64,000 bases of DNA from Ostrea edulis (GCF_947568905.1 NC_079171.1:49476001-49540000), one strand, 5' to 3'. Numbered from the stretch's first letter, positions 1 through 53,557 are shown. Notes: generated from the sequence alone by a model not told the origin. Program-made: numbers and translations.

Positions 1-378
1 TTTTTTTTTATTGTACTGTACAATACTGTTATGTATCAATAAACAATTGTTAGTCATGATTTTATTTCTACTTGTTTTGATAAGGCTAAAAATATATATG
101 TTGGTTTCCACTTTCCTGTCCAACCCTAAAAATTTCTGCCGACCCTAACATCGGATTATCCATGACAGTGCATTGGGACGCACTACATACCTGAACTTTT
201 AAAAACCCTAATTTACCTTACCAACATATAACAGCTAAACCCCATTAAAAGACCCAAAAGAAAAGAACTTCAGTTGCTATTTCAAATGTAGTTTGTTATC
301 ATAATTATGTCCTTTCGGTGTAATTTATTATTCCTAAGGGTTGTTTAAAATTGTTTTATACGTTATTAGGGTATTCCC

Positions 379-1212
379 ATGTTGGAATTCCCATGGGCAC
401 GAATTGTGCTCCTTTGTTAGCTGACCTGTTTTTATATTCATATGAAGCAGAATTTATTCAAAAACTTCTACGTGAGAAGAAAAAATATCTCGTTGTGACC
501 TTCAATTCGACTTTTAGATATATCGATGACGTTTTGTCTATTAACAATGATAGCTTTCATTCATATGTCGATTTGATATATCCCTGTGAGCTCGAAATAA
601 AGGACACCACAGAGTCGTCCACTTCTGCTTCATACTTAGCTATTTTATTGAAAGTAGACATTAACGGCACACTAACAACTCAACTGTATGACAAACGGGA
701 TGATTTCAGCTTCTCCATCGTCAACTTCCCACATTTATGTAGCAATATTCCATGATCACCTGTATATGGTGTTTATATATCTCAACTGATTCGATATGCA
801 AGAGCTTGTTCTGGGTATAGTCAGTTTTTAAATCGAGGTAAGCTAATGACAAACAAGTTGATGGTACAGGGATTTCAACAGTCTCGATTGAAGTCAGCAT
901 TTCGCAAAATCTATGGTCGTTATAACGATCTAGTTCGTCAATACAATCTCGCATTGGGTCAAATGCTGTCCGACGTGTTTGATACCGATTGTTAAGCCGT
1001 TCTTGGCACACTGATTTGACTGCGGATAACTCCGTTTACCTGATCAGGATATGGGGCTCACGGCGGGTGTGACCGGTCAATAGGGGATGCTTACTCCTCC
1101 AACGCACCTGATCCCACCTCTGGTGTGTCCAGGGGTCCGTGTTTGCCCAACTATCTATTTTGTATTGCTTGTAGGAGTTATGAGATTGATCACTGTTCGT
1201 TATCTTCACCTT
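379..1212 (+). mobile_element. Penelope-like element, 5'-truncated (RT C-terminal half plus 3' UTR)
   Basis: GIPMG...RYIDD...LYDKRDDF..VNFP...SNIP..YGVYISQLIRYARAC are PLE RT palm/thumb motifs. One premature TGA at 753-755; the natural stop is at 993-995; the 3' end is ...CGTTATCTTCACCTT. Confidence 0.9.
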
Positions 1213-3551
1213 GCATTGGACAATATATTTATGAAAATTGCTGCTAAAAATTTAAACATAAAGATCCAGTTTAATAACTGTAAAACAAACGCTATCAAAA
1301 CAGAAACATACCTTTCTTTTTCAAAGAGGTATAGTGCATTTGCTGACGATACGGCCGACTCAGAAATCTAAATGGAAAACACCGGTTTCCAATAATAGAC
1401 TGGTGTGTTATATCTAAATATAAGGCCAACGTTTTTTATGGTTTTTGATGTTTCGTTAACCAAGATAAATAACTGCCGCAGTTTAGCATTACTGACATTT
1501 AAATGAGTCGTTCTTTACTTAATAAACCATTTCCCTATTTGGAATGATGAACAATACAATATTTTCATAGACCTGTGCATTCATATTACACAACAACCCT
1601 TTAACATATGGCATTACTTAACTCACTGTTCTGACATGACTGCAGCGCCTTTAATAGATGGCATTAGTTCATTTGCCTTTGGTTGATAATTCGAGTGTTT
1701 ATCTTTGCCTAAATATCATATGACAGTTGCTACACGAGGTTTTTTTTTTTTTTTTTTTTTGAGAAGTCAAACTGTATAACAGTTCTTTTCCTCTCTTGAC
1801 TTATTTTTACTTATTACATACTGTACATTTGTGTCCTTTTCTTGTAGTATTTGTTTAGCTTTTCGTCAACCACATTACGGTTTGAAATTCCTGTGCACAC
1901 AGGAACATGTTAGTGTAAACAAGCGGAACTACAATAATCTCGGAATAAATTCCCTTTCTTTAAGTCGTAACTTGCAAATATTAGAAGTTATAATGAAAAT
2001 GACTAATATTTGTTATAATATATGTATCACATTTAACCCCCCCCCCCCTTCAAGAAAACGACCCCAAAAAAATGAAAAGCAAAAAAAAAAAAAATAGATT
2101 GGAAAAATATTGGACTTGAACTCGGGGAATGTATGGTTTAAGTGTAAGATTACCGAGCACCTAAACCACTAGGCCACCCAAGATTGTAAGTTTAAAGGTT
2201 TAACTTTTGACAGGCTGCTAAATCTCAAGGTAAATTTTGAGAACGATTTTTTTCATATTTTATCCATTTTCAACAAGAGGGCCACCTTAAACCAAATTTC
2301 CTTAGACGGACTTATATACAGTCATAATCAGGTAAAACAACTTCAGTGTTTTATTCCTGGTTTAAGGTGGCCCTTTGCAACAGTTTGCAATTTTTTATGC
2401 CCATTACGTTACATCTACTATATAATCTATATAATCACGGTGATGTTTATGCTTGTCAAATAAATATACTATCAACATATCGATATCTTTATTAAGTAAT
2501 TTGGGTAAACACAAGTATAAAATGACATTGTATAGCAGAATATTTGTAAAAAAAAAATGATATTCAAGAAAAAGGTATTTATGTAGGCGAAATTGCATAC
2601 CAAGTGCGCTATACCTCTTTGCAGATACTTGCACTCTGACACTTCTTGTATGAGGGCCTGTTGTCTGGCATGATGTGGTTTCTTTTTTCCTTCATGCTGA
2701 TTCTGATAAAAGAAAATATATTTCATGAGACGAGTGATAAGGCAGATGAATGACAATGTCTAATTGTCAACACACGCAAATAAACCTAAATAAATACACC
2801 TAAACACAAACACCCTTGTTTTGTCTGTGTTGTGTATTCATGGTGTCGAGATTGTAAGATCCCAAACCCGATCATAAATGCACACAATACATAATCGAGT
2901 AATGGTACCAAATGTACATGAACTGATATGGGAAATATCAAGTTAGTAAATAGTAGTGTTCTTCATTAAATCATATATAGATCAACACATACTCATTTTA
3001 AAATACTGACTTTAACCCCTCTCCCCATCCCTTTAGTTATTACTTACACATGTAGCTGGATCTGGACCAGATGGACCCAGAGTGTCTGCGGCTACCATCA
3101 TACAACCTGTATCCATGCCCTTATTTTCTTTTCCTCAGAGGCTTGATCAGGACCAAGTAATTCAGCTACAACCTAAAATATACAATACAAATGTTAGGAA
3201 TCAATTGCAAATACAATACCATTAATTTGCCAGAGGAATATTACATGTATATATACTGAACATTTGCCAGAATGTACTTCCTATTCCTAATTTTCCCACG
3301 ATGTGTTGCAAGTCTAACTCTAATTATGGTTTTCAATTGTAATCATAATGTATATTCTGTTTTAATGCTATATAGCAAAACGGATGCTCCCGGTTTCTAT
3401 CGGCCTGTATTTCAAGATTAATCATGGTAAAAATTTTCTTGTAATGATATATTTGATAGTTTGAAAATTGTATCAGTAAAGACAAACCCTGTTTCTTTCC
3501 CGTTTGGCTACAACTGAGCGCTCTGGAGTTGGGGACGACAAGAATGCCTCG

Positions 3552-7380: not shown

Positions 7381-10300
7381 GTTTGTTGGTTTTTTTCCCA
7401 GGTTTTTTTTAATATCAAAAGAAATGCATAATGCATGCTATCATACGATTACATAGGTACCACTGAATAACATTAAAAAGCATTCGATTTATTTTGTGGA
7501 GTTGACCAATGCAAATTAACTTTGATCTCCCCTTATGCCGTACAGGACACACACACTATATCAAATGTTATCTAATTGAGGTAAGCTACTGACAAACAAG
7601 TTAATGGTACAGGAGTTTAAACATTCTTGATTAAAGTCGGCATTTCGCAAATTCTATGGTCGTTATAACGATCTAGTTTGTCATTACAACATATAATTGG
7701 GCCAAACGCTGTCTGACGTGTTTTATAACGATTGTTAGACCGGTCTTGGAACACTGATTTGACTACGGATAACTCTGTTTACCTGATCAAGATATAGGGA
7801 TCACGACGGGTGTGACCGGTCGACAGGTGATATTTACTCCACCTAGGCACCTGACTTCACCTCTGGTGTATCCAGGGGTCAGTGTTTGCCCAACTATCTA
7901 TTTTGTATTGCTTAAGGGAGTTATGAAATTGAGCACTGTTCGTTATCTTCACCTTTCATTGGAGAAACATTTAACCATTGTACATGTAAATACCCGAATA
8001 TTGAATATTGTTATATTTAACAAGAGTTAAATGTACGTATATGAGATATGCCCACATTGTGATGCAAAATAATATTGAAATATCATGTCTGTAGATTGGT
8101 GTTTTTGATGTGGATACTGACGATCCATTTATGCTGTCAAACATTGTTGGTGAAGCTATTGTCAGTTGCTGGGCCATGAAGAAAATATTGACGGAAAAAT
8201 GTAGATCAACCATCTTAATTTTTGTTTTCTTCTGGATATAAATGTTTTAAATATCTAATATTTTTTGTATGAAAACGTTTGGCTCAGAGCTGAGATTTTT
8301 TAAACACTCAGGAAGTATTTCGAAAGCATTTGATAATGTACATTCTAATTAGAAATGGACACATTAATGGAACTTTTATCGAACTATGTACACATGGTGA
8401 AAAAGAAATAACATGCGTATTTCCAATCACCAATTATTACGGTTAGATACTATAAACTTATTTGTATGCATACGATTTTATATACGAATTCAGATAATGG
8501 AAGCTCATCAAAAGAAAACCAACCTGAGGCAACTTTAGATTATGAAACCTCTCGAAATGGGGATCGACCCAAGAGAGCATTTCCAGATTCTAACGTGAAT
8601 GGTCTTGCAATTACTGGTTCCTCATTGGCCTGTAAAGTATTAAAGAGAAATTCGGTGACACCCGAAAAAATTGCACCAGATCAGCTGTTGGAGGTCTACA
8701 AGGAGTCTAGAGCTTATGTACTGAACCCCAAGTACGCTTCTCCTACGGCACTTCCGCTTTACTTTTACTTTAGATATCAGGTTCTTCAGGAATCGGGATT
8801 ACTAAAGGATAGAGGCCACGTAAGTAAATGAAACTATTGTCTTTTTATCTACATTATTAATTTCGCGTTTGGAAATATCGATGGCTACTTATATTAAGAC
8901 AAGTTGAATACACAATTTACGTACAATTTTGGAGATAAGTATACTTTTTATATCGTTGTAGATTCTGCTTTTTGAAGCACTGAGAGCTAACCGTTGTGAC
9001 TATGTAAGAGTTTTATTGGATCATGGAGTGAAGTTTCAACTTTCTAACTTACAAGAGTTATACAAGCAGGTAACTTGGAAACTATCTCCATACACAAATG
9101 GCAGCCGTCAGATTCTCTTACTTGTCAATGTCCTGGTTGTGGGTCAGTAACGGGTATTTATAAAGCAAGACATTGACTGTGAGACAGTAGAAACGACCAT
9201 GTAGTTTAAACCGTTTTCAAAATTTCCTACGCAATTAAGAAGCGATATTTCTTATATTGAATGCATTCTCAAAAAAAGAATATGTAACGTTAAATATACT
9301 GTACATATATTCATCAAATCGGCACAATAATCTGATTTTGAAAGAACCTGAATCACAAACTCCAAAATATGGCCCTTAAAGGTCATAGGAGATGGTTTTT
9401 AACAATACCTTTTCTCTCCATAATTACCAACTTTGTTTCATAGACTCCTCATAAAAATACCTTTTTAAAATTAATAACAATATTAACTCGAATAAATTGA
9501 GGTGCAAAGGTAGTCGGAATAGAAAATCGTTACCCGATTATCGTTCCTGATTTCCTGAATTTGTGACGTCATAAGAGACCACACTCAGATTTGCGAATCA
9601 AAACAAAAGCACATTCATAAACGATTTATTCGCAACTGGAGGAGTTTTTGAATGGGGAACCATAGTTTGTTATGCAAGGATATCACTTTAAACTCATAAG
9701 TAATGCAAATGCCAGCCACATCGACGATTTTTCATCGGGGGACGAACAAGAAGATCAATCACTTGAGGTCCTATTTATTCCGAATCGGTTGACTTGAAAT
9801 AATACTGACTGGTTAATGATAAATGTATGATAATTTCATAGTACATTCTCTGATGACAATAAGAGAAATGTGGATAGCTATTACTTGCACTATTTATAAC
9901 ACCTTGCAGACACGGTGACGCAGCATCGGGGTTTTTTTCCAAGGGGGGTGTGTGTGTCAAATTGAAGGTTGACTGACAAGAAAGGTGGGTATTCTCTCAT
10001 CCCCCTTTGGTTTTATGTGACAAAGTCCCACCCTGACTCGGATGTATTGCATAGCCAGATCGGAATTTCCTTTGCACACATCGTGCGTGAGTGCCGTATT
10101 TTGAATTTATTTTCATGGGATTTTTACAAGTATCGTGAGCTATTTTAGTTTAACAGGTGAATATGATAATAAATATAAATGGCTTTAACATTCTTTTACA
10201 ATAAAATTTGCGACATTAGGGCCTATATGAAGAATAATTTACCATCACATTAGCCGCTATAAGGGCTCTCTCTTGCGTATAATGGTTGGAACTGGAAGCC

Positions 10301-13300
10301 AGGGGAAGAACGAATTCTTCGTCTGGACCAGTTATTGAAGGAACTGTCGAACAATCCGAATGCCATGACTGTTTTCGTTGGCCATGCGTTTTGGACGAGT
10401 CACACAGACAACTTTAGGTAGCCAAAGAATTCTGGTGTGCGGTCCAGAAAAAATAATTCAAACAGAATAAAACTTTCTAATTTAAACAGTTTTGGAATAT
10501 GTTGAGTCATCGTGGGGTGTGCGACGATGATCAGTTCATAAGCTGCCAGAAAATTTGCACAGTACGCAGGAACTCCCGTAGGAAACTATGTTTGGCAGTC
10601 ATACATCGTCGGATATCCAGTAGGCAGTCAAATGGATACAAGAAAACTTAGAAAAAAGAATAATCTTCCTAATTTATCAATAGCTAACGTCCTCATTTAT
10701 ACAAAATAAATTTATCGAGCTTTAAGTTTTACATGTCGATTCATTAAATTTAATTATCAACGTTTCGATTAACCTGCGCAAGAAAAATGACTCCCATGGA
10801 TTTTTCAATCTTACAAAAACGTACAGGTAATGCAGGTAACACAGATAACACCCCGTGTATTTGGGGTGGTATATACAAGCTAGTAGAGTTCCCTCGGGCT
10901 TGGGGCTTCACACCTGCCTAAAATTAGTCCCTCCCTGCACTTAACTTACCTGAGGAAAACCGACAGGTTGTACAAAATCCTCAGCCTTTAATTATTTTTT
11001 TTTTGTTTTAAATTTTGACCCCAATAAGGAAACCAACGTGCATATTAGTGCTTCATTTGAAGAAAATCACCCCCCAACTCTTGCATGCACGTTAAAATTG
11101 GTTTATTTCACCTGATATAAAAACTTGTAATTTAAATATCGCTCCACCATTTGCTTTGAACATTCTTTTTTAAACAGAAAAATGGCGGGGTCTGATAATC
11201 CAACTTTCAACATATGAAGTTAGTAAACCCATATTCAGTTTATTTATTTATATATTCAGAGAAAAAGATTCTGATCAGAAGAGCTTCATATGACTATTTC
11301 ATAGTTAAATTCATTTCTAAACAAATCAGATCGTGTTTAATGTAAAACATATACGGTACCAATTTTGATGCACCAGATGCGCATTTCGACAAATAATGTC
11401 TCTTCAGTGATGCTCAACCGAAATGTTTGAAATCCGAAATAACTATGAAGTTTTAAATCTAAATATAGCCAAAAACAGCGTGCCAAAAAAGTGGAGCCAA
11501 ATTCGTCCAAGGATAAGAGCTATGTATGAGGGAGATAATCCTTAATTTTGAAATGATTTTCTAAATTTTATAACAGCAATTAAATATACATCCGTATTTT
11601 CAAGCTAATAACGAAGTACTTAGCTACTGGGCTGTAGAGACCCTCAGGGACTAACAGTCCACCAGCAGAGGCCTCGACCCAGGGGTCATAATGTAATTCT
11701 TATACGGTACCAATTTTGATGCACCAGATGCGCATTTCGACAAATAATGTCTCTTCAGTGATGCTCAACCGAAATGTTTGAAATCCGAAACAACTATGAA
11801 CGTTTCACTTATTTTGACAAAAGGACCAATTTTGGTACTTTGTGGCTCCAGTTCTTTGCGGGGTTCTATTTCACTTTTTTATAAGATTCGATTTTTGTTT
11901 TCCATTTTATATCTAGACTGTGTCTTGTAAAGGTTGTAAGACAAACGATGACTGTCTCCACATGCAGTGGATATTAAAGGTAATCAAAGCTTAATTTGAT
12001 ATAGATAACACCGGTGATAATCAACATATATATATATATTTCGATTGCTAGTGAAAGTCTTTGAATGATTCGTTTCTTATTTTAGGAGATATTTGCCCAT
12101 TTTTAGACAAATTATTCGAGAAAGAAAACCCACCAATATTTGGTGATTTTTTATCATATATTAACTGTGTGTCGATGTTGCATGTCCGTATGTCAAAAAA
12201 TGAAATATCTTATTCAGCATATTTTTTTTCGTCCCTTAAAAATCTCATTATGTAAGATGTATTTCGTACATATTTTACAGCAAATCCAAGAGAAATACAC
12301 CAAACAATTATGTCTGCAAGACAAATCCACGACGCATGAAGTCCTAGAGGCAGCAGAAGGTTTATGTCAAAGAATCTTGAGATATAAAGGTATTAACTGG
12401 AAAATTGTAATAATAGAAACTAACATATACTTCTTTCAGTTTTCCAATCACCAGAATGTCACTTTTATTTTCAAAGTACCTTTTTGTCTCATAAATTATG
12501 TTTCCTCGAATAAAATGAGTTGTACGATTTCAAGTATTGATAAGCTGATATAACGCTTTAAGATCAAGTCTATGTAAAAATCAAAAAAATCAGATAGGGT
12601 CTAGCCACTCGATGTCACAGATTTCTTTGATTTTCACAGTATTAACTTTACTTGCACCATCTTACATAATTTCAACCCCACCACCAAATGTCTACCATCC
12701 GTTGCCATGGAAACCGCCAGCAGTCTATGAGGGCTAATTGAACTGCATTTAGATAATTGAACAATTTAGATAATTTGGAAAATACATACAGCATAATCAA
12801 CTGTCATCAAAGTATGTCCATATCAAAGACTCTTAATATATATAAAAATAGTAATGGTGAAACGTAGTGCAATTGATCTGTAGTAGCATGAAAACTGTAG
12901 ATTTTGGCATTTTGTCAAAAAGGGATTTTTTGTTGGATTTCGTTGATGAATTTAGGTAATTTGGAAAATACATACAGCATAATCAACTGTCATCAAAAGA
13001 TGTCCATATCAAAGACTCTTAATATATATAAAAAATATTAATGGTGAAACGTAGTGCAATAAACCTATTGTAGCACGAAAACTGTAGATTTGGGCATTTT
13101 GTCAAAAAGGGATTATTTGTTGGATTTTGTTGATGAATTTAGATAATTTGGAAAATACATACAACATAATCAACTGTCATCAAAGGATGTCCATAACAAA
13201 GACTCTTAATATATATAAAAAGATTAATGGTGCAATTGATCTGTAGTAGCATGAACACTGTATATTTGGGCATTTTGCCAAACATTCATACTAATGACAA

Positions 13301-21100: not shown

Positions 21101-24100
21101 GACGCTGTGTGTTTGGGTTTTCGACGAAAACAAAACCAAATAATAATGTTTCCACTGAATGTTTAAATGGCATATATTTCGTGCGACCTCCCATAATTGT
21201 TTAACATTGTTGCAATCGAATATTACGTGTTTTATATCTTCCGTCAATTTACAGTTATTGCATAAATTTGAAACGTTTTTATTCCAGATGCTCACAGACT
21301 TATATTGTCCAATAAATTATGTAGCAGTTTGAAACTGAATTCAGCTAGCTGTTTGTCTCTGCATTTTATCATTTTTGATGTATATATTGATTTTCTGTGT
21401 TCTTTGAAGTCATTAAAAAGCTTCGTTAAAGTTTTCTCAAAATAGGGTTTAATGAAGTTTTTAGAAATGAAAATCTTATCTTATATAACATTTTACAATT
21501 AAGTTGATCTAAAGATACGTTTTCATTGTTGCTTAATAAGAATTTGTCATTATTTCATAAACTTGTTTTTATTTGTTTTTACCCTCTCTTCTACTTACTT
21601 TAATGTTCGTTTAAGTAGATTATATTCACAAATCCAGTTAGATTCGTTTTGTATTACATCAGAGAAATATTCTATGTCATGAAAAGTTTCCTCTTGGTTA
21701 GATAAATCCTTTACGTACAGAATCCCACCTTTGCCCAAGGCCAAAAACAATTATGTAATTACTTGGTTCTCAGGCTAGTTTTGTCAAAAATAAAGGAAGG
21801 AGGGAGGCGTTTTTTTCCTTTTTACCTCATAAAAAATATACGAGGACTTTTATTTTATTTCAAATTTCTATTTCTTTAATCCATTGCACAATACACATTG
21901 AAAGAAATGAAGAACATTATTTCCTTCTCTTCTTTTTTTTCTCTCTTGCTATTTCTAGATTCTTTCTTTTTGTGTGGCAACTAGTGATTAGCCCTTCAGC
22001 TTTCACAAGTGGGATAAGCCCCTTCAATTTATTCAACTGTGTTATATGCACAGTAAAATCATATTGGACGGAACATTTACGATATCTACCAGTTTCATCA
22101 GATTGTGTCAAGACCCTGGTCATCAGATAATGCGTTATCATTTCTGTTACATTTCTATGTTTATACAAAATGGAATTGACAGATGAAAACAACAATATTG
22201 TTTTTTTATTCAAGTGTGCATAATTGCTGTAAGTCTATGTCACCTTTGTGTTTAAGGCGTAAATCACGTATCAAAACATGTCATTCAGATTTCAGCGTTT
22301 CTACTTTCGTTTTGATACTGTACTCAATTTCGCCGAATTTGTTCAGTTTATTCCTGCACATACCGCCCTTTATCGTAATTTGGGCGAGGTACATTATCGA
22401 TTATCTCTAGAAGCGGATCGTAAACAATAAAATGTTCTCTTAAAATCAACCGTCTTTGTTTTTTTGTTTGTTTTTTTTAGACAAAATGTTGTGGCAAAGG
22501 CGACAACACGCCATTACTCAAACCAAACTGCATTATGTATGGCGCGATTTGATTGCACGTGTCTGTATCCTCCAGACGTTTGTCAAACATTTTACTGACG
22601 GTAGTCTCTAAAATGCGGTCGGGGTTTCCGGATTTTTCTTAGTACCTTACGAGCGCATGAGATAAATTTTATTTTATTCATTTAATGATAAAAATGGGTA
22701 ATGCGCGTTGTTAAAAGAAATGCAGGCGGACCTGAGAACCAAGTAATTAATTTTCTTCGGCTCAGTGAGTGTAAAATAAAGAATGTTTTTTATTTGGAAA
22801 TTTTCATTTAGCCAGATAGGTTATGATAGAGCCTTGTCTGCTGATGCATATATTTTCCCTGTAAGTTTGCATTCACTAAACGCATACAAAACTTCACAGT
22901 AAAAAGTAGGTAAATTTTAAACGCATTTTAAGATCACATATATTTGTATTGTTAGTTTTCAAGAGATATATTAAATATATTGATTTTTTACCTATACATG
23001 ATTCGAAAAACGATTTCATTGTCGAATTATTTTTGGATAAGCGTTTTATCTATATAGCTTTTAACGATATGAATTTATTTTCCACATCGACAAATTTCGC
23101 AAATTTTATGGCTGTTATAGCGATCTATTTTGACAATACAGCCTATTATTTGGGTCAAATGCTGTTTGGCGTGTTTCGTACCTATTGTTAGGCCGTTCTT
23201 GGCGCACTGATTTTGACTACAGATAACTTCATTTACCTGATCAAGATATAGGTGAATTTCACAACCCCAGGGTTTTGACTGTAGGATGGGTTCAAATTAG
23301 TCATATCTTTTAGTGTTTTAATGTTAATACACCTATTACATTATTTAAAGCCTTACATCAGTGTATTTACTTTTGAGGACATTGAAATTTTAAGAATATG
23401 TCTTCTTTTATAGAGATTTGAATATTATTATTTAGCTTAGATATTCAGAAAAATAAATTTTGCATATTTTATAGCACTTGGGTCTAGTGATTCTTTGGAT
23501 CTCTTGGTTTCAATTGTGCTTACTATTGATTTAAGGCAAGAAAGACAAGGAAAACAGATCAAAATATGAAGACATTTTCCATCTCTTGCTTTGGGCGATA
23601 TTTGCCAACAGAAAAGAGATAGCCGAGATTTGCTGGCTTCGAAGCGAAAATCATCTATGTGAGTATTTGATGTATATAGAATTATTATCTTCCCAGTGGA
23701 TGTTTTATATATATTATAATCCAAATAAACTTTTATTGATTTAGTGACCGGTTTAGTATCTTCAGCCGTGTTACGGAAGTTAGCTAATAAGGCAAATAAT
23801 GTGAAAGAACAAATCCTATCAAGCGAGTTGGAGGAACATTCAAAGTTAGTATTTTATTTTAACGACTGGAAACTAGAGTACTGTTTTATATACACATATT
23901 TATACACAGAAAAATTATTTAATGTAATTATCCAACCTCCATGTACATAAAAAGCAAATAAAACATGCTTGGTATTATCATTTTATATTGTACAATGGTT
24001 GGAACACAGTTATACGTACAAGGGGTGACTTGAAAAAATACTTGTCAAAGCAAATCGTAAAAATATACCAATGAAAGTTGATGAAATAAAAGTTTTTTCT

Positions 24101-24311: not shown

Positions 24312-25672
24312 GGTGTTAAGAAAATTCGTTCCGTTTGTAAATTTTAAAAATTAAATAGAAAAACTAAATATTTTTGTTTCAAATTTTTACTGGGAACACT
24401 TTAGAATTTTGTTTCCATTATATCGATAGTTATCCTTCCCTATGTGCACTCTCTCGTGTTACTATGGAGTGATGTAAACATAATGTCTATTACGTCATGA
24501 AATAAATATGCCGAGTTCGTTGAAAAAGCAGACGTCCTGTACAAGTGTCGATACAATTAATGAACGAGCTCAAGCTTTGGCTTTATTAGATGCAGGATTA
24601 AGTGTGAAGGATGTGGCTAAGCAACTATGTAAAAGTGAGCGATGGGTAACAAAGTGGAGACGAAGGTGAGAGCAAAATAAACAAGTAACCGATCAACCGA
24701 GATCCGGTCGGCCATCGAAAATAGTGGGGGTAGTAAAGAAAAAAGTGGAGAACATAAAATACAAAAGAGGAAAATCAGCAAGAAACTTAAGAACTCAGGC
24801 TTTAATGTAAGTCACGTAACTGTTTATAATTATTTGCGAAAAGTTAAAAAATGGAAGGCATTTAAAAGATCGAGAAATCAACTACTGACAAAAAAACAGA
24901 GGCAAAAGAGATTGAAATTTGCTCGTGATCACAAGCATTTGACGGCTGAAGACTGGGAGAACTACATCTTTAGTGATGAATCTACAAAATATTTGTTTCA
25001 TGTTCCGAACCGACAGGACGATATTGTATGGGGGTCCCAGTCAGATGAGGTTCCAGACGTAAGCTGTGTCAAGTCAAGAGCTAAAGTCATAATACGGGGT
25101 GCGATGGGAGTTCAGGGTTTGTCCAAATTTCACATTGTTCCAGCCGGCAAAACTATTAATGCTGACTATTATGTGAAGAAAATTCTTCAAAAAGAACTAA
25201 AACCTGGTCTGAATCGACAGAAAAATAGTGGTAGGATTGACGAACGAAAGTTGGTTCAATATCCAGGACACGCTACGTTTGTTCAAGATGGAGCGACACC
25301 TCACACTGCCCTCCTAACACAAAATTGGTGTGAAAATAATTTACCAAACTTTATTTCGAAAGAAGAATGGCCAGGCAATTCCCCAGACCTAAATTGTATA
25401 GAAAATCTTTGGAGTATTCTGAACAGCGAGGCCTACAAAGATCCGCGCCCAACAACAATGAGCCAATTACGCCGCCGACTTCAACGTACATGGAGGGAGA
25501 TACCTCAGAAACATTTGATTTCTTTAATTCATTCAATGCCAAACAGAATTAAAAATGTATTGAAAAACAAAGGTGGACTGTCTGGTTATTAAAAACATAA
25601 AAACTTGTATATGAGTCGTTTATAAATAAGTTTAGGCATGATGTGAATCATGGAACGAACTTTCTTAACACC

Positions 25673-28700: not shown

Positions 28701-31700
28701 ATATGAATGTCAACGGCAAACTAACAACTAAAATATGAGAAAAAACTTACTTCAGATTCTCCATCGTCAACTTCCCATTTCTATGTATAAATATCCCATT
28801 AACACATGTATTTGGTGTTTATATGATGTCTATGTCTCTTAACTGATTATATATGTTAGAGAACGTTCTGTGTATTATCGATATCTAGATAGAGATAAGC
28901 TTCTGATAAACAAATTAATTTCACAATGCCTCGTTTGAAATCAGCATGATTGATACAATGATCATATACAACATGTGGTGTCGAATTATGTCTTAGATGT
29001 TCTATGCTAGGTTACCAGATCAGGGTAGAGAACTTGTGATGAATGTGATCGGTCAACAGTGCATGCGTATACCTCCTAGGGACATAATACAATATCTGTT
29101 ATGTCCAGGTATCTGTGTTAGTCACACTCTTAATTTGTATTCCGTATTAGAAATGTTTCCATTTCAAACTATAGCAATATCGGATTTCTGATTTAAGGTT
29201 TCATCGTAAAGCCCACATATAGCTGATTATTTCATATTCCTGGGCAAAATTACAGATATGCCTAAGATATGGTAATCGACTTCAATTCGATCACAGGAAA
29301 TCGGGGCACATTTGCACATATAAAAGATCACAAAATAAGAAATGGAATATAAAATAGAATATTTGTTTTCTAAAACTGACAAAAAATGCTTAAATATCAT
29401 CTAGGGATGCCTAGAAGCAAAGGGTCGTTCACATCGCAGTTATTACTCCCGGATGAAGAGATACCTGTATGACTTCTGGAATGTTGTGGATCTTTTGTCG
29501 TATGCAATACTGATTGCTGCGTTGTTCGTGCGTCACATGTACCCCTCTGATACTTTTACCATCGCCAGGAGAATGTTTTCCTTATCCCTGCTTGTCATGT
29601 ATCTGAGGTTTCTGGAAGTATTTCTCATCCACAGACGGCTGGGACCTACCCTAATTATGATCAAGGAAATGGTACGTCATTTTGTTTTTAAAATATGATA
29701 TGATACACAGCAATAGTATGTATTAAAATCTTTATAAAAGCTGTAGTGAAATAAAATTCTATGGAATTATGTCTCCACTCTTTCAAGGGAGACATACTTT
29801 CCGTCCGTCCGTCCGTCTGTCTGTCATACAATATTGTGAACGCTTCCCTTCTTATATGGTTTAGTGGATAGACTTGGAACTTTGTACAATACTTCATTGC
29901 CATTTGTAGATGCACACATTGTTAAGACAGGATAATCCAAACCGTTATAGTGGATGTAAGAAGATGGAGGATGTAAAATAGCTTCTGATTACTTCTCCTC
30001 TATGGCTTATCTGATAAACTTGAAAGTTTGTACAATGCTTCATTGCCATATGTGGGTGTGTACATATTGATGAGACATGTGGATCCAATTGTTTTCGTAA
30101 AGGTTATCATGGATCTTAGAGAGGTGAAGGATGTTAAATTCGTCTGTGGACACTTCTCTTATATGGCTTATCGGATAAATTTGAAACTATTTGCAATGCT
30201 TCATTGCCATTTGTAGATCTGCATATTGTCGGGACAGAGAGATCAAACTGTTTTCCTCAAAGTTATCGTGAATCTTAGAGAGGTGGAGGATGTTGAAATA
30301 GCTTGTGAACACTTCTCCCATATTGTTTATTGGATATATTTGAAACTGTACAATGCTACATTGTCATTTGCAGATGTGCATTTTGCAGGGAGAGGAGGAT
30401 CCAACAATCGTTGTCCTGAATGTTGTAGTGAATTTGGGGGGTGAAGGGTGTAAAATAGTTTGTGAACACTTTCTCCCAAGTGACTTATCGGAGTTTATAA
30501 TGTCTTTGTTGTTGCTCATGCTTTCTCCTTCATACCCTACAGTACATTAAGGGAGAAGGTTTTCATTTGGAGCACTTCCAATTTGGGGAGCTGGGTAGAC
30601 AATTGTTTTTTCATAAAAACAGTTTCTAGTTACCATAAGTGTTGCGGTTCGCTATCACATCTGTCAATATCGCATCACAAGACTCTACTAAATCGCTTTG
30701 TAAACTTTAACACGTACATGTCAGCTACGTTAATCAATTAATGTTCCAGAATTTAAAGATAAAATTATTTTACCGCTTGTAAAGGAATCCCTAAATTTTA
30801 ATGTTTACTAAAATAATGTCCCCGATTTTTTTTTTTACCTTAGCTCTATTAATCGTTCTAAATTTTGAATTCCGTTCCGCATTTAGTAACATTTTGTTAT
30901 ATACCATAAAACATACCTTAGAGTTTGCTTCAAATCGTTGATGATAAGCTTGAAACCTCTAGAAGTAATATTTGGGATTGAACAAACATAATGCTCTTTT
31001 CTTAGAAAAACAAAATTGTTGGATACATGGCCTATTCACATTCATGTTTGTTTTGTATTAAAATATTGTAGTTGAAGGATTTATTTGGTTTCCTGTTCGT
31101 GGCAGTCTTTATTGTGATAGGAGTTGGGATTTACTTCCACGCGAACCTCTGGCCGGATCATCAGGACATGTGGGATGCTGACTGGACGCAGTGGAGAATT
31201 TGGAAAATCATCTATTTCCCTTACTTTCAACTTTATGGGGAACTATTCAATAATTTTTTGGAAGGTAACTATGTTATTGTTCAATGCGAACTTGATTAAT
31301 ACAGTATAGTCATAATTGATAAGTTGTTCAATTCACGAGATTTTGTTCTTGGTTTTCAAGAAACAATTTAGAGCATAATTATGAAATAACATTTCGATAC
31401 GATAACCGAATGTCTGTGGAGCTTTGCTATCGTAGTTGTTGAAGACTACTTTTGAATGTCATGTGTGTGGGATCTAGTGTAGTGGTTTATTTCATCCAAA
31501 AAAAAAATCCTCGGGTTTATCCGTACGATGAAAGGTGGAGATAACGAACAGTGATCGATCTCAAGACTCCTATAGGCAATAAAAATTAGATAACAGGTGC
31601 CTAGGAGGAGTATGCATCCACTGTCGACCGGTCACAACCGTCGTGAGCCCTACATCCTGATAAGGTAAACAGAGTTATTCGTAGTCAAAATCAGTGTGCC

Positions 31701-41449: not shown

Positions 41450-44400
41450 TTACGAATCTGATTCGGATTCTTCTGCAATATCTTCCTCATCATGAGCAAC
41501 AATTTCTCCTGTATCAAATATTTCCTTCCGGTGCAAAACCTTTGTTTGTCCACAATGGTCAGCTGGTCTTACCTTGTAAACATTTTCTTGTAACCTTTCT
41601 ATGACAACATATGGAAGTGCCTTCCAGACATCTTGAATTTTATTCCGGCCTTGCACATGGTTTTTCAAAAGAACTTTTGCACCTACCTGTATTGCAGAAG
41701 GCGTAGAATTCTTGTCGTGTAACTCGCGTCGTCTTTCAGCACCTTTCTTTGGATTTTGTAATGCTTCAGTAAGTGCTTTGTTGAGTCGCTTCTTGTGTGA
41801 ATCTAGCCATTCGTTGACGCCTGTGGCATTACTGTCATGATTGATGCCCAGTAAATGATCAATTGGTAGTCTTGGTTCTCTACCGAAAAGAAGATAAAAA
41901 GGAGACAACCCAGTAGTTGCATGTGGAGTTGCGTTATATACATATACAATTTCTGGTAAATATGTTGTCCATTTCTTCTTCCTTTCTGTATCCAGTGTCC
42001 TTAACCGATCATGCAATGTACGATTAAATCGTTCACATTGTGAGTTTCCTTCAGATGATAAGGAGTACACCTGGACTTCTTGATGTTGTACAACTTGCAT
42101 AACTCTTTGACCACTTCGCCCTCGAAATTCCTACCTTGGTCACTGTGTAAGCGATTGGGAATTCCAAATTTGTGGAACCAATTGTACACCAAATTTTTAG
42201 CAACTGTTGAAGCCTTCTGATTTTTTGTTGGAATGGCTTGTGTAAATTTCGTGAAAACATCTGTCAAAACCAATACATTTTCGTAACCATCTGACGATTT
42301 TTCTAAAAGTGTGTAATCCATTGCTAGAATTTCTAATGAGTGTTTAGCAATCAAATTCCCCATTGGTGGTCTGATAGTAGGAATAGGTACTTTTGCGATC
42401 ATACATCTCTCACATTTTTCAATCCATCTAATAACATCACCTTGCATTCCTGGCAAATAGCATCTTCTTTTGGTGAAGGCCAATGTTCTCTCTCGACCTT
42501 GATGACCAGAACAATCATGTAAGGACTCCAAAACTTGTTGTTTCAAACAGTCAGGTAGAACAACCTGCAAATACTCTCCATCCAAATCTTTACTGGTCAT
42601 GAACAAGACACCTTCTTTCACCTGCAAAAAATAATATTTCCTTAGAAGTTTCCTTACCTTTTTATTTTCCTTAGAAATTTGTCGAGATGTTGGTTTATGC
42701 CCAGAATCTAACCAATTGAATACTTTAGAGATATTTCGATCATCTCTCTGTAGTTTCTCCAAATCTGGCATACTATACTCTGGAAAAGTTGGTGATAATA
42801 CTGCTGACTCCTCAACATCCTCGTCATTTGTGATGATCTGACAATCTGTGATAATGCCTTGCAGAGACACTGACTTGGAAACATATGATAGAATTTCTTC
42901 CGAGTTACTCTGACAGTGCATTCTGCTTAAACTGTCAGCATTTTGGTTCAATTTGCCTGATCTATACTTTATTGTGAAATTAAATTGAGCCAACTCTGAA
43001 GCCCATCTTAACTCAGTCGCACCCAATTTTGCTGTCTTAAGATAGCTCAGAGGATTATTGTCGGTATAAACGACAAAGTCATTCCCTAAAAGATAATCTC
43101 TGAATTTGTCCGTTATCGCCCATTTCAGTGCTAGTAACTCAAGTTTCATTGAGTTATAATTTGACATGTTTTTCTCACCTGGTTTGAGACTTCTGGAAGC
43201 ATAAGCAATCACTACGCGCTGATCTTGTTGCTGGCTCAAAACTGCTCCAAGTCCGTTTAAGCTGGCATCCATTTCAAGAATGAATGGAGTCTCAAAGTTT
43301 GGAAAACCTAAAACTGTAGTACTTGTAAGACATGTTTTGAGTCTTCCAAAAGCAGTATCGCAGTCGGCATTCCATCTAACACTGGAAGGTACCTGTTTTG
43401 TAACTAGTTTCCTACCTTTGGTTTTCTTCTCTTGTTTTGTCAACACTGCATGTAGAGGCGCTGCTATCTGACTAAACCCCTTAATAAATTTTCTGTAGTA
43501 CCCGGCTAGACCAAGAAAAGACCGCAATTCCTTTTCTGATTTAGGCGCTTTCCAGTCATTAATAACAGCAATTTTCTCTGGGTCGACTTTCACTCCCATT
43601 TCACTTACAACATGACCAAGATATCTAACCTCTTTTTCAAAAAAAGTACACTTAGAAGGCTTGATTTTTAACCCATTATCCCTCAGTCTGTTGAAAATAA
43701 ATTCTAAATGATCTGCAAAAGATTTTGAAAATACGAGAATGTCATCCAAGTAAAGAAGAAGTATTTCAAAATTCTTATCACCTAGACAAGCTTCCATTAA
43801 TCTTTGGAAAGTACTCGGACTATTGCAAAGACCAAATGGCATGCGCACAAATTCATATAAACCAAGAGGTCCAACTCGAAATGCTGTTTTATGACAATCT
43901 CTCTCGTCCATCTTAACTTGATAGAAACCTTGTGCCAAATCCAAAGTTGAAAAGTATTTCGCGCCATGAAGAGCATCTAAAGCCTCTTCAATTATCGGTA
44001 TTGGAAATGCATCTTTGATTGTTTTAAGATTAAGCTGTCTATAATCTACGCAAAGGCGCAAAGAGTTATCTCGCTTCCGCACCAATACCGCCGCAGCACC
44101 GTAAGGACTTGTGCTAGGTCGAATTATACCTTACTGCAATAGTTTCTGAATATGAGACTTCACTTCTTCCATCTGATTTGGAGGAATTCTTCTATGGGGT
44201 AGTTTTACTGGAACATTGTCAGTCGTCAATATTCTGTGCTGTACAGTATCTGAAAATCCTAGATCATCAGTATCCTTACAGAAAATATCCTGATGTTGAC
44301 CAATAACTGATACCTACATGTCTCTTTCATTGTCAGACAAGCATGTACCAATGTTTACGTCTACACCATGGATTTTTACAGAATTCTTTGTGGAAGTTAC

Positions 44401-45231
44401 TTCATCTCTTACATCGGCCTTTTGTTTGCATTCTAGCTGTACTTTTCCTATGCATACTTGTATTTCCTGACTACTCACCTGTATGTCCACTTCACAATCT
44501 TAGTGAGGGGAATACTCAACCTCTGTTCGACATAATATACCTACCCTTGTTTTTGGATTAAGCCATGCATCATCATCACCAATGTTAACTACTCTGAACG
44601 GAATAATACCGTTTTCGACATTTGCATATGTGTCAATTACAATAATATTTCTGTGGAGAGAACCGTGATCTCCATATACTGCTTGTACAAGAGCACTATA
44701 GTTCTTGGAACTTTGGCGTGTAGTACCCATATCAACTTTCATGGTTCTAGATGGGATTTTGACCGGATTTTGACCTGCAACCTTGACAAAACTTAATTTT
44801 TCAGAGTCATCAACTGGAGATACACTCATTTCAAACACAGACAGAGTATTAAGTAAATGATCATTTTTGCCTGTAATCGAAATAAGGTTCTGATCTACTT
44901 GTTCCCTAAGCATATGGAAGAAATTACTTCCCAATACGCCAGGAACACGCATTTTTCTATCTTTACCAAAATTATCAACAGGATCCTTTACAACTAGTAT
45001 TCCAACATTTGGAATGGAATAATGAGCAGTGTCTATATCTACCTCTATGTAAACAATGTATGGAATTGGTAGATGATTGGCGCCAGACACTCTCATCCAT
45101 TTGGTTACATCTATTAATTTTGGCTCTGATTTCAACAAATCTCGGAAGTAAGACTCGTTGATTGTAGAAACTTGTGAACCAATGTCAATTAGACACGATA
45201 TTGGCTTACATTCTATGTTGACTGTTACCAC
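41450..45231 (-). pseudogene. Gypsy pol: protease, RT, RNase H, integrase (stop and frameshifts)
   Basis: LIDIGSQVS (PR); RMPFGL and YLDD (RT); DASLNGLGAVL (RH); H-H-C-C and the D,D-E integrase core split across ORFs 42001-44085 and 41450-42100. Confidence 0.95.
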
Positions 45232-45308
45232 CGGACATTTCCCAATAGCTTTCTCAATGATATGCTGGTCAATTGAGTCATTAAGCCCATCGTCCGCTGG
45301 TTGATTCT

Positions 45309-46399
45309 CTACAACGGACGCTTCTCGTTTAAAGGATTGGTATTTGAACTTTTTGACATACCTTTCCCCTGAAAAGTTTTATCATCTTGTAACTGAGTAC
45401 TACATTCGGGTGCTCTGTGCCCCTTTCCACCGCAACGGTAACATGTTAAATGAAATTGCTTAATTTTAGGAAGCTGTTTTCCTTTGACAGTTTTTGCATC
45501 AGAATCGGATTTACTTTTCACGACCTGATCAGACAATTTTTGCAATTGTTTTTGATTTTCTTCAATTTGTTTCTGTTGTACTTTAGGAATGTTCATAAGA
45601 TCAAGTAATTGACTATCATCTTGTGATGTTAAAACTCTAGATTTGATACTATCTTGTGTGTATATTTCATTCGCAGAGTATTTGCTCAGTGGTTCAGCTC
45701 TATAATCTTCAGACCACTGTAACACTGTCTGTCTAAACTCACCAAATGACATAGACTTCCTTTCAAAAGAAAACCGTCTGATCTCTCTCCGGAGAGACGA
45801 ATCGCGAATGCCTCAATAAAACGTTCTTTCAACAACTCATCGAAATCGGTGACTACATTTTCGTCTTTCGTGATAATCTGTTCAACTAATTTCATAAGTG
45901 CCAAAGAATAATTTTGTAAAGATTCACCATATCTTTGATCGCGTTGATAAAACTGTTGTTGCAGAGCGCCAAGAGTTTCTGTGCTTACAAATACATCTCT
46001 GATTATTTTCAAAATTTTCTCTGACGTATCCCTTTCTACAGTGGGGCGTAATCTTATCTCAAATTTAGCCTGTCCACCCAAATTATCCATTAAAAAATAT
46101 ATTCTAGCATTTTCATCATGAATAATTCGAAGATGTTAATCTGCATCTTGTAACCACTCTGATACATCTGGGTCATTCTCTTTCATTGGTCTTCCATTCA
46201 ACTTTGCAATATGTTTCTCTCTCGCAACATAAACAGTTTTATTTCCTTTCATTCGACTCTCAACACTCGTTCCCTTTTTTTCGTTTATATTTCTTTCTGT
46301 TAACAATTGTTCTTGAAGTCTGAACAGTTCGTGCTCTAAATGTCCTGATTTTTGTCTTTCATTGTGAAGCTACTCCTTAATTTCTTTCTTTGTAGTCAT
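45309..46399 (-). pseudogene. Gypsy gag (PNMA-like, CCHC zinc knuckle), frameshifted
   Basis: ORFs 45686-46090 (FYQRDQRYGESLQNY) and 45309-45752 (CYRCGGKGHRAPEC). Confidence 0.85.
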
Positions 46400-53158: not shown

Positions 53159-53557
53159 ATGCACATCTGGTGCATCAAAATTGGTACCCTATAAGTTTTA
53201 CATTATGACCCCTGGATCGAGGCCTCTGCTGGTTGACTGTTAGTCCCCGAGGGTCTCTAGAGCCCAGTAGCTAAGTACTTTGTTACTAGCTTAAGAATAC
53301 GGATGTATATTTAATTGCTGTTATAAAATTTAGAAATTCATTTCAAAATTAAGGATTATCTCCCTCATGCATAGCTCTTATCCTTGGACGAATTTGGCTC
53401 CACTTTTTGGTACGCTGGTTTTGGCTATATCTAGATCAAAAACCTCATAGTTATTTCGGATTTCAAACATTTCGGTTGAGCATCACTGAAGAGACATTAT
53501 TTGTCGAAATGCGCATCTGGTGCATCAAAATTGGTACCGTATAAGTTTTACATTATG
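53159..53557 (+). mobile_element. Second retrozyme-like locus (one full monomer, 350 nt between cleavage sites)
   Basis: Reverse-complement homolog of 11339-11800. Only the 3' remnant of the first hammerhead is present (ATGCACATC^TGGTGC at 53159-53173); a full hammerhead follows at 53480-53523. Confidence 0.85.
53480..53523 (+). ncRNA. Minimal type I hammerhead ribozyme
   Basis: gcatca ctgaaga gaca ttatt tgtc gaaa tgcgca tc^tggtgc; predicted cleavage after C53517. Confidence 0.9.

What the first reader, a model, noticed from the sequence alone, without database searches (positions are those of the whole stretch)
11339..11800. Tandem hammerhead ribozymes defining a 351-nt retrozyme-like unit inside a TRPM intron
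Seen: two identical minimal type I hammerheads on the - strand, 351 nt apart (cleavage sites at 11727 and 11376), each GCAUCA-CUGAAGA-GACA/UGUC-GAAA-UGCGCA-UC^UGGUGC. Stem III (AUGCGCAU) is self-complementary with too short a loop to fold alone. Established: PLE-associated minimal hammerheads with palindromic stem III cleave as dimers, and tandem-hammerhead non-LTR retrozymes in metazoans, including bivalves, yield small circular RNAs. Inference: a transcript across this locus could fold as a double hammerhead and release a 351-nt monomer or circRNA. It is antisense to the TRPM pre-mRNA, so it should not cut the host transcript.
Basis: partly seen in the sequence, partly recalled or inferred. 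Interest (0 to 1): 0.75.

Follow-up and report, generated by a model that had tools for sequence, protein, structure and literature searches.

The report
Hammerhead retrozyme copy in TRPM intron
This is one ordinary 468-base copy of a very abundant non-coding mobile repeat of a bivalve-like genome. It carries two self-cutting hammerhead RNA motifs, and elements of this kind (animal "retrozymes") were already described in mussels, corals and salamanders.

Summary
Two identical 44-nt type I hammerhead motifs lie on the - strand, with cleavage C at 11727 and 11376, 351 nt apart. Rfam Hammerhead_1 matches over its full length at 31.2 bits, just under its 34-bit cut-off.

The pair belongs to one 468-bp insertion (11338-11805). 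This is a 351-nt unit with 78 nt of the preceding unit and 38 nt of the next.

The family has 10,357 exact ribozyme cores in this 895-Mb genome. In 30 sampled copies the 3' end is fixed 36-44 nt past the cut site and the 5' end varies. Copies hold 1.1 to more than 4 units, and long target duplications are occasional. This is the signature of target-primed reverse transcription on a multimeric or circular RNA, as in Penelope-like elements (PLEs), which abound here.

The predicted lowest-energy fold of the 468-nt transcript is the double hammerhead, but it does not dominate the ensemble.

The element lies antisense in an intron of a TRPM channel gene.

Not shown: cleavage, circular RNA, or transcription of this locus. 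Only family contigs in RNA libraries were seen.

It is a new member of a known kind (metazoan non-LTR retrozymes, 2020). This scan already holds 132 notes on the family on other DNA of this genome.

The parts
11338..11805 (-). Whole retrozyme insertion, 468 bp: unit positions 274-351, then 1-351, then 1-38.
   Evidence: BLAST of the unit against locus L001, which is the window copy; direct repeat D1; family hits begin and end at these coordinates.
11721..11764 (-). Upstream hammerhead (type I). C17 is at 11727, with the predicted cut between 11727 and 11726.
   Evidence: Sequence; pattern match; identical to the copy scored by Rfam RF00163 at 31.2 bits.
11370..11413 (-). Downstream hammerhead (type I). 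C17 is at 11376, with the predicted cut between 11376 and 11375.
   Evidence: Rfam RF00163, model 1-45 of 45, 31.2 bits, E 1.1e-6 on a 76-nt stretch; pattern match.
11376..11726 (-). The 351-nt monomer that double cleavage would release. It is non-coding (no open stretch above 56 codons in a trimer) and has 37.6% GC.
11338..11375 (-). 3' tail of 38 nt past the downstream cut. It ends at the 3' boundary shared by the family (...UUUUACAU[UA]).
   Evidence: All 30 sampled copies end at unit position 36-44.
11727..11805 (-). 5' partial unit (positions 274-351) that supplies the upstream hammerhead. The 5' end is a truncation point that differs from copy to copy.
   Evidence: 5' ends range from unit position 1 to 331 among 30 loci.
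53168..53557 (+). Second copy of the family in the window (unit 1-351 plus 1-40, 94.3% identical). It has one intact hammerhead at 53480-53523. Its 5' end lies at, or about 9 nt before, the cut site, so there is no upstream ribozyme.
8962..9085 (+). Upstream TRPM exon (approximate limits). It places the element inside an intron.
   Evidence: This ORF has paralogous matches between the LSDAT exon and the transmembrane exon in every TRPM paralogue of the contig-8 cluster and in three on contig 5.
29405..29695 (+). Downstream TRPM exon covering transmembrane S3-S4.
   Evidence: PDB search: best match is the Nematostella TRPM2-like channel 6co7, residues 907-984, E 8.5e-11, and the listed matches are TRPM channels. 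Pfam Ion_trans, E 4.9e-4.
9376..11340 (.). Unrelated repeat of about 1.96 kb that ends exactly where the retrozyme's 3' end lies. This probably explains why no target duplication is visible for this copy.
   Evidence: Copies elsewhere are 88-94% identical and stop at window 11340.

Best explanation
The locus is one insertion of a young, very abundant family of non-autonomous, non-coding retroelements of the metazoan non-LTR retrozyme class. Shown here: each 351-nt unit carries one canonical metazoan type I hammerhead whose helix III is a palindrome. That helix cannot close within one motif, but it pairs with the same stretch of a second motif. Genomic copies are head-to-tail runs of 1.1 to more than 4 units. 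Their 3' end is fixed 36-44 nt past a cut site and their 5' end is variable. Inferred: multimeric transcripts fold into double hammerheads and cut themselves into 351-nt monomers. These monomers are probably ligated into circles by a host RNA ligase, as shown for mussel, coral and axolotl retrozymes. A Penelope-like reverse transcriptase/endonuclease then starts cDNA synthesis at an internal site about 36 nt downstream of the cut. Its template has an intact ribozyme junction, so it is a circle or an uncut multimer. Synthesis runs round or along the template for a variable distance, which leaves 5'-truncated tandem copies. This particular copy sits antisense in a TRPM intron. It has both ribozymes intact, but nothing shows that it is transcribed.
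For: Motif and spacing. Rfam Hammerhead_1 matches full length at 31.2 bits. Family size: 10,357 exact cores, reversed control 0; 40 scored full-length units are 96-100% identical to the window unit. Architecture in 30 loci: fixed 3' end at unit 36-44, 5' ends anywhere from 1 to 331, and 1.1 to more than 4 units. Long target duplications occur in 2 of 30 loci (about 30 bp in L004, 11 bp or more in L009), against 0.9% of mismatched flank pairs. Folding: one motif -7.8 kcal/mol; two motifs -27.3 kcal/mol as a double hammerhead with an 8-bp intermolecular helix III. The unconstrained MFE of the 468-nt transcript, -100.1 kcal/mol, equals the fold forced into the double hammerhead. The unit is non-coding with 37.6% GC. 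[quoted passage not shown] Copies of that PLE end 49 or 97 nt past a hammerhead-like cut site. This is the same layout and the two-start 'tail' signature reported for PLEs (PMC11167929). Family contigs of 283 and 321 nt stand in RNA libraries while the locus flanks have no depth. The class is described in PMC7229834 and linked to PLEs in bioRxiv 10.64898/2026.07.22.740005.
Against: No cleavage, unit-length RNA or circle was shown. Only assembled contigs were available, and DNA carry-over of a 10,000-copy repeat could explain them. The Rfam score is 2.8 bits below the gathering score. The double hammerhead is the MFE, but its ensemble frequency is about 0, the centroid shows inactive local hairpins, and the z-score against shuffles is +0.74. 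The circular monomer is no more stable than shuffles, z +0.4. The family is too young for compensatory changes, so there is no covariation support. Most copies (28 of 30), this one included, show no clear target duplication. No PLE with this exact ribozyme and tail was found. The one active PLE examined inserts into (TA)n, unlike the retrozyme.
Confidence: 0.85

Rival explanations
1. This copy is an inert fossil. The family makes RNA from other loci, and this intronic antisense insertion is never transcribed on the - strand, so its two ribozymes never act here.
For: RNA-library contigs cover only family sequence and give no depth on the unique flanks of this locus. No promoter evidence was obtained. 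The copy differs from the majority of sampled copies at 8 of 351 positions, and its two 117-nt repeats differ by 5%, so it is not brand new.
Against: Both hammerheads are intact and identical. Contigs cannot show absence of transcription. An internal promoter cannot be excluded: a B-box-like 11-mer sits at unit position 47, but it is a weak match.
Confidence: 0.5
2. The repeat is a 5'-truncated end (pseudo-LTR) of an autonomous Penelope-like element and not a separate non-autonomous element.
For: PLEs in this genome carry hammerhead-like motifs near their ends and form partial tandems. PLE pseudo-LTRs and retrozymes are related in Xenopus.
Against: In all 30 loci, sequence 5' of a unit is another unit or unrelated flank, never a coding body. 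The unit has no significant similarity to 35 PLE loci apart from inserted retrozyme copies. It has no ORF above 56 codons.
Confidence: 0.05
3. It is satellite-like DNA spread by unequal crossing-over or segmental duplication, and the hammerhead is a passenger.
For: Head-to-tail units occur. Units within an array are only slightly more alike (97.5%) than units of different arrays (96.8%).
Against: Thousands of short dispersed copies lie on all large contigs in both orientations. The 3' end is fixed to the nucleotide range 36-44 while the 5' end varies. Target duplications occur. None of these is expected from DNA-level tandem amplification.
Confidence: 0.03

Closest known systems
Metazoan non-LTR retrozymes, especially that of the mussel Mytilus galloprovincialis (Cervera & de la Pena 2020, PMC7229834)
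   Same: Short tandem units (mussel 350-390 bp, here 351 bp), each with one type I hammerhead. Thousands of copies (about 5,000 ribozymes in mussel, 10,357 exact cores here). Low GC, no LTR, non-coding, target duplications only in some copies, and coexistence with PLEs.
   Different: The mussel element was shown by northern blot and cloning to give abundant circular RNA and to self-cleave in vitro (kobs about 0.1 per min). Nothing of the kind was shown here.
Newt satellite 2 / axolotl retrozymes and the double hammerhead of Forster et al. 1988 (as cited in PMC4209133 and PMC7229834)
   Same: Type I hammerhead with an unstable, palindromic helix III that is expected to cut only when two motifs pair. 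Tandem units.
   Different: The host is an amphibian, with different unit sizes and up to 120,000 copies. Dimer dependence was measured there and is only predicted here.
Hammerheads of Penelope-like elements (min-HHR; Cervera & de la Pena 2014, PMC4209133)
   Same: Palindromic helix III region, predicted dimeric action, and a position near the 3' end of a retroelement that forms partial tandems. The 3' end lies a few tens of nt past the cut site (retrozyme 36-44 nt; local PLE 49 or 97 nt).
   Different: The min-HHR has a long helix II (7-8 bp), a short helix I (4-5 bp), a bulged base before helix II and no helix III. The motif here has helix I 6 bp, helix II 4 bp, no bulge, and a 2-bp helix III with a 4-nt loop. 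The element has no RT/EN ORF.
Plant LTR retrozymes (Cervera et al. 2016, PMC4918200)
   Same: Non-autonomous retroelement whose hammerheads delimit an RNA that circularises.
   Different: The plant elements have type III hammerheads inside real LTRs, a primer-binding site, a polypurine tract and 4-bp duplications. They are 600-1000 nt long and are mobilised by Gypsy elements. No LTR organisation is seen here.
Rfam RF00163 Hammerhead_1
   Same: Full-length alignment with every core position conserved. The model's own consensus has a zero-loop palindromic helix III.
   Different: The score of 31.2 bits is below the 34-bit gathering score, so standard annotation misses it.

Membership tests
Hammerhead ribozyme, type I (Rfam RF00163) | Conserved core: C3 U4 G5 A6 N7 G8 A9, G12 A13 A14, the A15.1-U16.1 pair, and H17 before the cut | tested here: met
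   CUGAAGA, GAAA, A...U and C17 are all present in both copies.
Hammerhead ribozyme, type I (Rfam RF00163) | Helices I and II present, open end at helix I, G10.1-C11.1 pair | tested here: met
   Helix I is 6 bp (GCAUCA/UGGUGC). Helix II is 4 bp (GACA/UGUC) starting with G-C. The topology is type I.
Hammerhead ribozyme, type I (Rfam RF00163) | Covariance-model score at or above the curated gathering score | tested here: not met
   31.2 bits against 34. No hit in the standard scans.
Hammerhead ribozyme, type I (Rfam RF00163) | Site-specific self-cleavage | not testable with these tools
   This needs in vitro transcription. Only contigs were available, and they cannot show RNA ends.
Metazoan non-LTR retrozyme | Short tandem units (about 170-400 nt), each with a type I hammerhead, dispersed in many copies | tested here: met
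   351-nt unit, 1.1 to more than 4 units per insertion, 10,357 cores.
Metazoan non-LTR retrozyme | Non-coding, no LTRs, low GC (<50%) | tested here: met
   Longest open stretch is 56 codons; GC is 37.6%. The terminal repeat is just the next partial unit. A primer-binding site and polypurine tract were not searched for explicitly.
Metazoan non-LTR retrozyme | Target-site duplications, when present, longer than 4 bp | tested here: met
   About 30 bp in L004 and 11 bp or more in L009, so 2 of 30 loci against 0.9% of controls. None is visible for the window copy.
Metazoan non-LTR retrozyme | Expressed as linear and circular unit-length RNA | tested here: inconclusive
   Family contigs of 283 and 321 nt stand in two RNA-library studies, with no depth on the flanks. 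There were no raw reads, no ends and no circle-specific joint, and DNA carry-over is possible.
Metazoan non-LTR retrozyme | Coexistence with autonomous Penelope-like elements | tested here: met
   1,102 GIY-YIG candidates; intact 787-aa RT plus GIY-YIG ORF in tandem arrays.
PLE 'min-HHR' (PMC4209133) | Helix II of 7-8 bp, helix I of 4-5 bp, unpaired base between positions 9 and 10.1, no helix III | tested here: not met
   Helix II is 4 bp, helix I is 6 bp, there is no bulge, and a 2-bp helix III carries a GCGC loop.
Autonomous Penelope-like element | ORF with reverse transcriptase and GIY-YIG endonuclease | tested here: not met
   No ORF above 56 codons in the unit. No similarity to 35 PLE loci.

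The most novel reading that the evidence does not exclude
The copy architecture may be a genomic record of the transposition intermediate. Every sampled insertion carries an uncut or re-ligated ribozyme junction at its 3'-most hammerhead, and cDNA synthesis starts about 36 nt past the cut. The template therefore cannot be the cleaved linear monomer. It must be a circle or an uncut multimer, copied by a Penelope-type enzyme that initiates internally, the same layout as the local PLE with its two 3' ends 49 and 97 nt past its own cut site. A genome-wide map of 5' ends could then tell which template is used. Ends piled at the cut site would point to partly processed linear RNA, and uniform ends to rolling-circle copying of circles. 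That would give the first sequence-level evidence for how animal retrozymes are mobilised.
Probability: 0.45. Interest if true: 0.45.

Novelty: new member of a known kind. Interest (0 to 1): 0.2.

Why it matters
For this locus, little. It is one of thousands of copies of a repeat class published in 2020, and this scan has already flagged the family 132 times in this genome. At family level it has modest value. It is a clean, young, roughly 10,000-ribozyme retrozyme family in a 10-chromosome bivalve-like genome, and its fixed 3' end and variable 5' end give a readable record of Penelope-type integration. That could help settle whether circles or uncut multimers are the templates. Standard annotation (Rfam at gathering score) misses the ribozyme, so such families are under-counted in genome annotations.

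Tried and rejected
**Standard Rfam scans.** The scan at gathering score on the whole window and at E<=10 on 1.5 kb found no hammerhead. This was a filter and threshold effect, not absence.

**tRNA origin.** ARAGORN found no tRNA-like gene in the element. A SINE-like tRNA origin is therefore not supported. Only a weak B-box-like 11-mer was seen.

**Search for the mobilising PLE.**
- The unit shows no significant similarity to 35 PLE loci beyond inserted retrozyme copies.
- Recurrent 15-17-nt matches are chance matches repeated by PLE copy number.
- The active 787-aa PLE inserts into (TA)n, unlike the retrozyme.
- No partner was identified.

**Circular RNA evidence.** Only Logan contigs were served. 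They gave no begin/end table and no circle-specific joint. The 'goes back' and 'skips' joints occur only in run X19, of unknown kind, where the unique flanks of the locus also have depth, so they look like variant genomic copies.

**Rolling-circle test.** Units within an array are 97.5% identical, against 96.8% between arrays. The difference is too small to discriminate.

**Covariation.** Helix II variants among 100 listed cores are single changes or wobble pairs, with no compensatory pairs.

**TRPM paralogue regions.** Intron placement was therefore shown from coordinates of paralogous exon matches instead.

**Upstream exon in the PDB.** The search with the upstream exon hit only ankyrin-like designed proteins, not TRPM. 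That exon rests on the paralogy test.

**Spliced TRPM model.** Exons were searched one by one by reference.

**Homology to the mussel retrozyme.** The paper's held supplement has no matching sequence text.

Full report
**1. The observation**

Reading the - strand of 11200-11950 shows the same 44-nt string twice, at 11764-11721 and 11413-11370. Its parts are:
- helix I 5' strand GCAUCA;
- core CUGAAGA;
- helix II GACA/UGUC with loop UUAUU;
- GAAA;
- the palindrome AUGCGCAU, whose last U is position 16.1;
- C17;
- helix I 3' strand UGGUGC.

A pattern for the core has 3 matches in the window and none in 100 shuffles. The third match is on the + strand at 53486-53517. A 117-nt direct repeat, 95% identical, frames the pair.

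Rfam found nothing at gathering score or at E<=10 on 1.5 kb. On a 76-nt stretch, Hammerhead_1 (RF00163) aligns over its whole length (model 1-45) at 31.2 bits, against a gathering score of 34, with E 1.1e-6. Every core position is conserved. Notably, the model's own consensus has a zero-loop palindromic helix III. The earlier blanks were therefore threshold and filter effects.

**2. What it belongs to**

The 351-nt unit is a repeat family.
- The own-genome search gave 1,285 first-look candidates. All 40 scored full-length matches are 96-100% identical.
- The core pattern occurs 10,357 times (5,207 forward, 5,150 reverse), and the reversed control occurs 0 times.
- The genome has 895 Mb in 52 contigs. 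Ten are large, to judge from the contig numbers hit. The RNA runs that hold the family are labelled mollusc or marine metagenome.
- I infer a bivalve with ten chromosome pairs, oyster-like. The organism names are coded, so this was not verified.

I aligned the unit to 30 fetched loci.
- The 3' end is fixed. It falls at unit position 36 (12 loci), 37 (6), 38 (6) or 39-44 (6), always ...UUUUACAU[UA].
- The 5' end is variable. It falls anywhere between positions 1 and 331.
- Insertions hold from 1.1 to more than 4 units.
- Sequence 5' of a unit is always another unit or unrelated flank, never a coding body.

The window copy is 274-351 + 1-351 + 1-38, which is window 11338-11805.

Long target duplications are present in 2 of 30 loci (about 30 bp in L004, 11 bp or more in L009), against 0.9% of mismatched flank pairs. 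Most copies show none.

The unit has no open stretch above 56 codons in any frame of a trimer and is 37.6% GC. ARAGORN finds no tRNA-like part.

**3. How it most likely works**

*Shown in silico.*
- One motif folds weakly, at -7.8 kcal/mol and without helix III.
- Two motifs co-fold at -27.3 kcal/mol into the classical double hammerhead. Helix II forms within each strand. An 8-bp helix III forms between the two palindromes. Each enzyme half pairs with the other's substrate strand.
- The unconstrained minimum-energy fold of the 468-nt locus transcript (-100.1 kcal/mol) is identical to the fold forced to contain the double hammerhead.

*Against over-reading this.*
- The MFE has an ensemble frequency of about 0.
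- The centroid shows local inactive hairpins in which the palindrome pairs with the helix I 3' strand.
- The z-score against shuffles is +0.74.
- The circular monomer is no more stable than shuffles, with z +0.4.

*Inferred from established work.* In mussel, coral and axolotl such repeats are transcribed as multimers. These self-cleave and accumulate mostly as circles, probably closed by a tRNA ligase (PMC7229834). Helix III-poor type I motifs act as dimers, so circles with a single motif are spared (PMC4209133).

*Inferred from the copy architecture.* Each insertion ends 36-44 nt past a cut site and contains that junction intact. The reverse-transcription template therefore had an uncut or re-ligated junction, meaning a circle or an uncut multimer. 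Synthesis started at an internal site. The variable 5' ends and unit numbers fit synthesis of variable length round or along such a template.

**4. The Penelope link**

The genome has 1,102 GIY-YIG candidates, many in long open frames.

One young family forms 3,717-bp head-to-tail arrays. [quoted passage not shown]

Between its units lies a hammerhead-like motif: helix I of 5 bp, CUGAGGA, a weak helix II, and GAAA followed by the palindrome AGCGCU.

Copies of this PLE end either 49 or 97 nt past that cut site and sit in (TA)n. Two alternative 3' ends a few tens of nt apart are the 'tail' signature that Frangieh et al. traced to two internal RT start sites (PMC11167929).

The retrozyme shows the same layout: a terminal ribozyme followed by a short tail. 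However, it does not insert into (TA)n, so this PLE family is probably not its mobiliser. No PLE with the AUGCGCAU motif was found in the 35 PLE loci examined.

A 2026 preprint reports that vertebrate retrozymes are related to PLE pseudo-LTRs.

**5. Weak signs of constraint and age**

In 58 sampled units, per-site variability is 0.8% in the 50-nt hammerhead and 1.8% elsewhere. The sample was chosen by similarity to the window copy, so this is only suggestive. I used a majority profile solely for this count and do not reproduce it here.

The window unit differs from the majority at 8 positions, none in the ribozyme.

Units within an array are 97.5% identical and units of different arrays 96.8%. 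This fits a recent burst followed by decay, but does not discriminate between templates.

**6. RNA evidence**

Only assembled contigs were served.
- A mollusc RNA-seq run of 3 million letters holds family contigs of 87 nt (no mismatch, spanning the 11376 cut site) and 283 nt.
- A marine metatranscriptome holds a 321-nt contig.
- In both, the flanks of the locus have no depth.

Contigs cannot show ends, strand or circles, and DNA carry-over of so abundant a repeat is possible. Expression of the family is therefore plausible but not shown, and expression of this locus is not shown at all.

**7. Gene context**

The ORF at 29405-29695 (+) matches TRPM channels in the PDB. The best match is 6co7 residues 907-984, the S3-S4 segment, at E 8.5e-11. 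It has about 16 paralogous matches on contig 8 between 49.0 and 50.2 Mb.

The ORF at 8962-9147 (+) matches, over its first roughly 40 residues, a site lying between the LSDAT exon and the transmembrane exon in six + strand paralogues on contig 8 and three on contig 5. It is therefore a conserved exon of the family, although the PDB search gave only ankyrin-like hits for it.

The ORF at 23535-23741 weakly matches TRPM2 residues 621-654, and all 11 hits are TRPM.

The element at 11338-11805 therefore lies in an intron of roughly 14 kb and on the opposite strand. It abuts another repeat (9376-11340) whose copies elsewhere stop at exactly that point.

Exons were searched one by one.

**8. Comparison and verdict**

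By the published definitions the motif is the canonical metazoan type I hammerhead, not the PLE min-HHR.

The element meets the sequence-level features of metazoan non-LTR retrozymes. The expression and circle features are untested.

It is a new member of a known kind. This scan already holds 132 notes on the same family elsewhere in this genome, several with the same verdict. Interest is low for the locus. The only point with some wider value is the fixed 3' end past an intact junction, read as a record of the transposition template.

Noticed in passing
window 53168-53557 (+): A second copy of the same family (94.3% identical) whose 5' end lies at, or about 9 nt before, the hammerhead cut site. 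It has only one ribozyme. L009 also starts exactly at unit position 1, and L017 and L021 start at positions 12 and 11. 5' ends may be enriched near the cut site, which would point to partly processed linear templates.
   Followed up: partly
genome contig 8, about 49.0-50.2 Mb (the window is 49476001-49540000): A tandem cluster of about 16 TRPM-like channel paralogues. The transmembrane exon is 70-93% identical between them at protein level, and at least one carries in-frame stops. Further copies lie on contigs 5 and 7. This is a lineage-specific TRPM expansion.
   Followed up: partly
L061 (genome contig 1, 110501001-110511000), L062-L064: A young canonical EN+ Penelope-like element with ORF1 of 406 aa (no Pfam hit) and ORF2 of 787 aa (RVT_1 plus C-terminal GIY-YIG). 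It forms 3,717-bp head-to-tail arrays and head-to-head pairs and inserts into (TA)n. It has two alternative 3' ends, 49 and 97 nt past a hammerhead-like cut site whose helix II is very weak.
   Followed up: partly
window 9376-11340: A repeat of about 1.96 kb with 88-94% identical copies on many contigs and no long ORF. It ends exactly at the retrozyme's 3' end. Which of the two inserted first is unknown.
   Followed up: no
window 380-1217 and 324-752 (+): A very young repeat (at least 25 copies at 97-98% identity) with a weak reverse-transcriptase match (RVT_1, E 0.005). Related pieces lie near 15.3-16.0 kb.
   Followed up: no
window 24681-25589 (+): A 303-aa open frame with Tc3-type HTH and DDE_3 transposase domains (a Tc1/mariner-like element) inside the TRPM gene region.
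   Followed up: no
window 41453-46135 (-): Long open frames of 709, 292, 226, 167 and 149 aa that look like the pol and gag region of an LTR-type retrotransposon, downstream of the TRPM exons. Not scanned against Pfam.
   Followed up: no
unit position 47-57 (window about 11670-11680, - strand): A B-box-like 11-mer, GGGTCGAGGCC, one mismatch from GGTTCGANNCC. No A box and no tRNA-like fold were found. The chance expectation is about 0.07 per unit, so this is a weak lead for an internal Pol III promoter.
   Followed up: partly
genome contig 1, 3344563-3346076 and 471731-471936 (from the pattern list): Hammerhead cores of the same type spaced 834, 648 and 174 nt apart instead of 351. These may be variant or rearranged units.
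   Followed up: no
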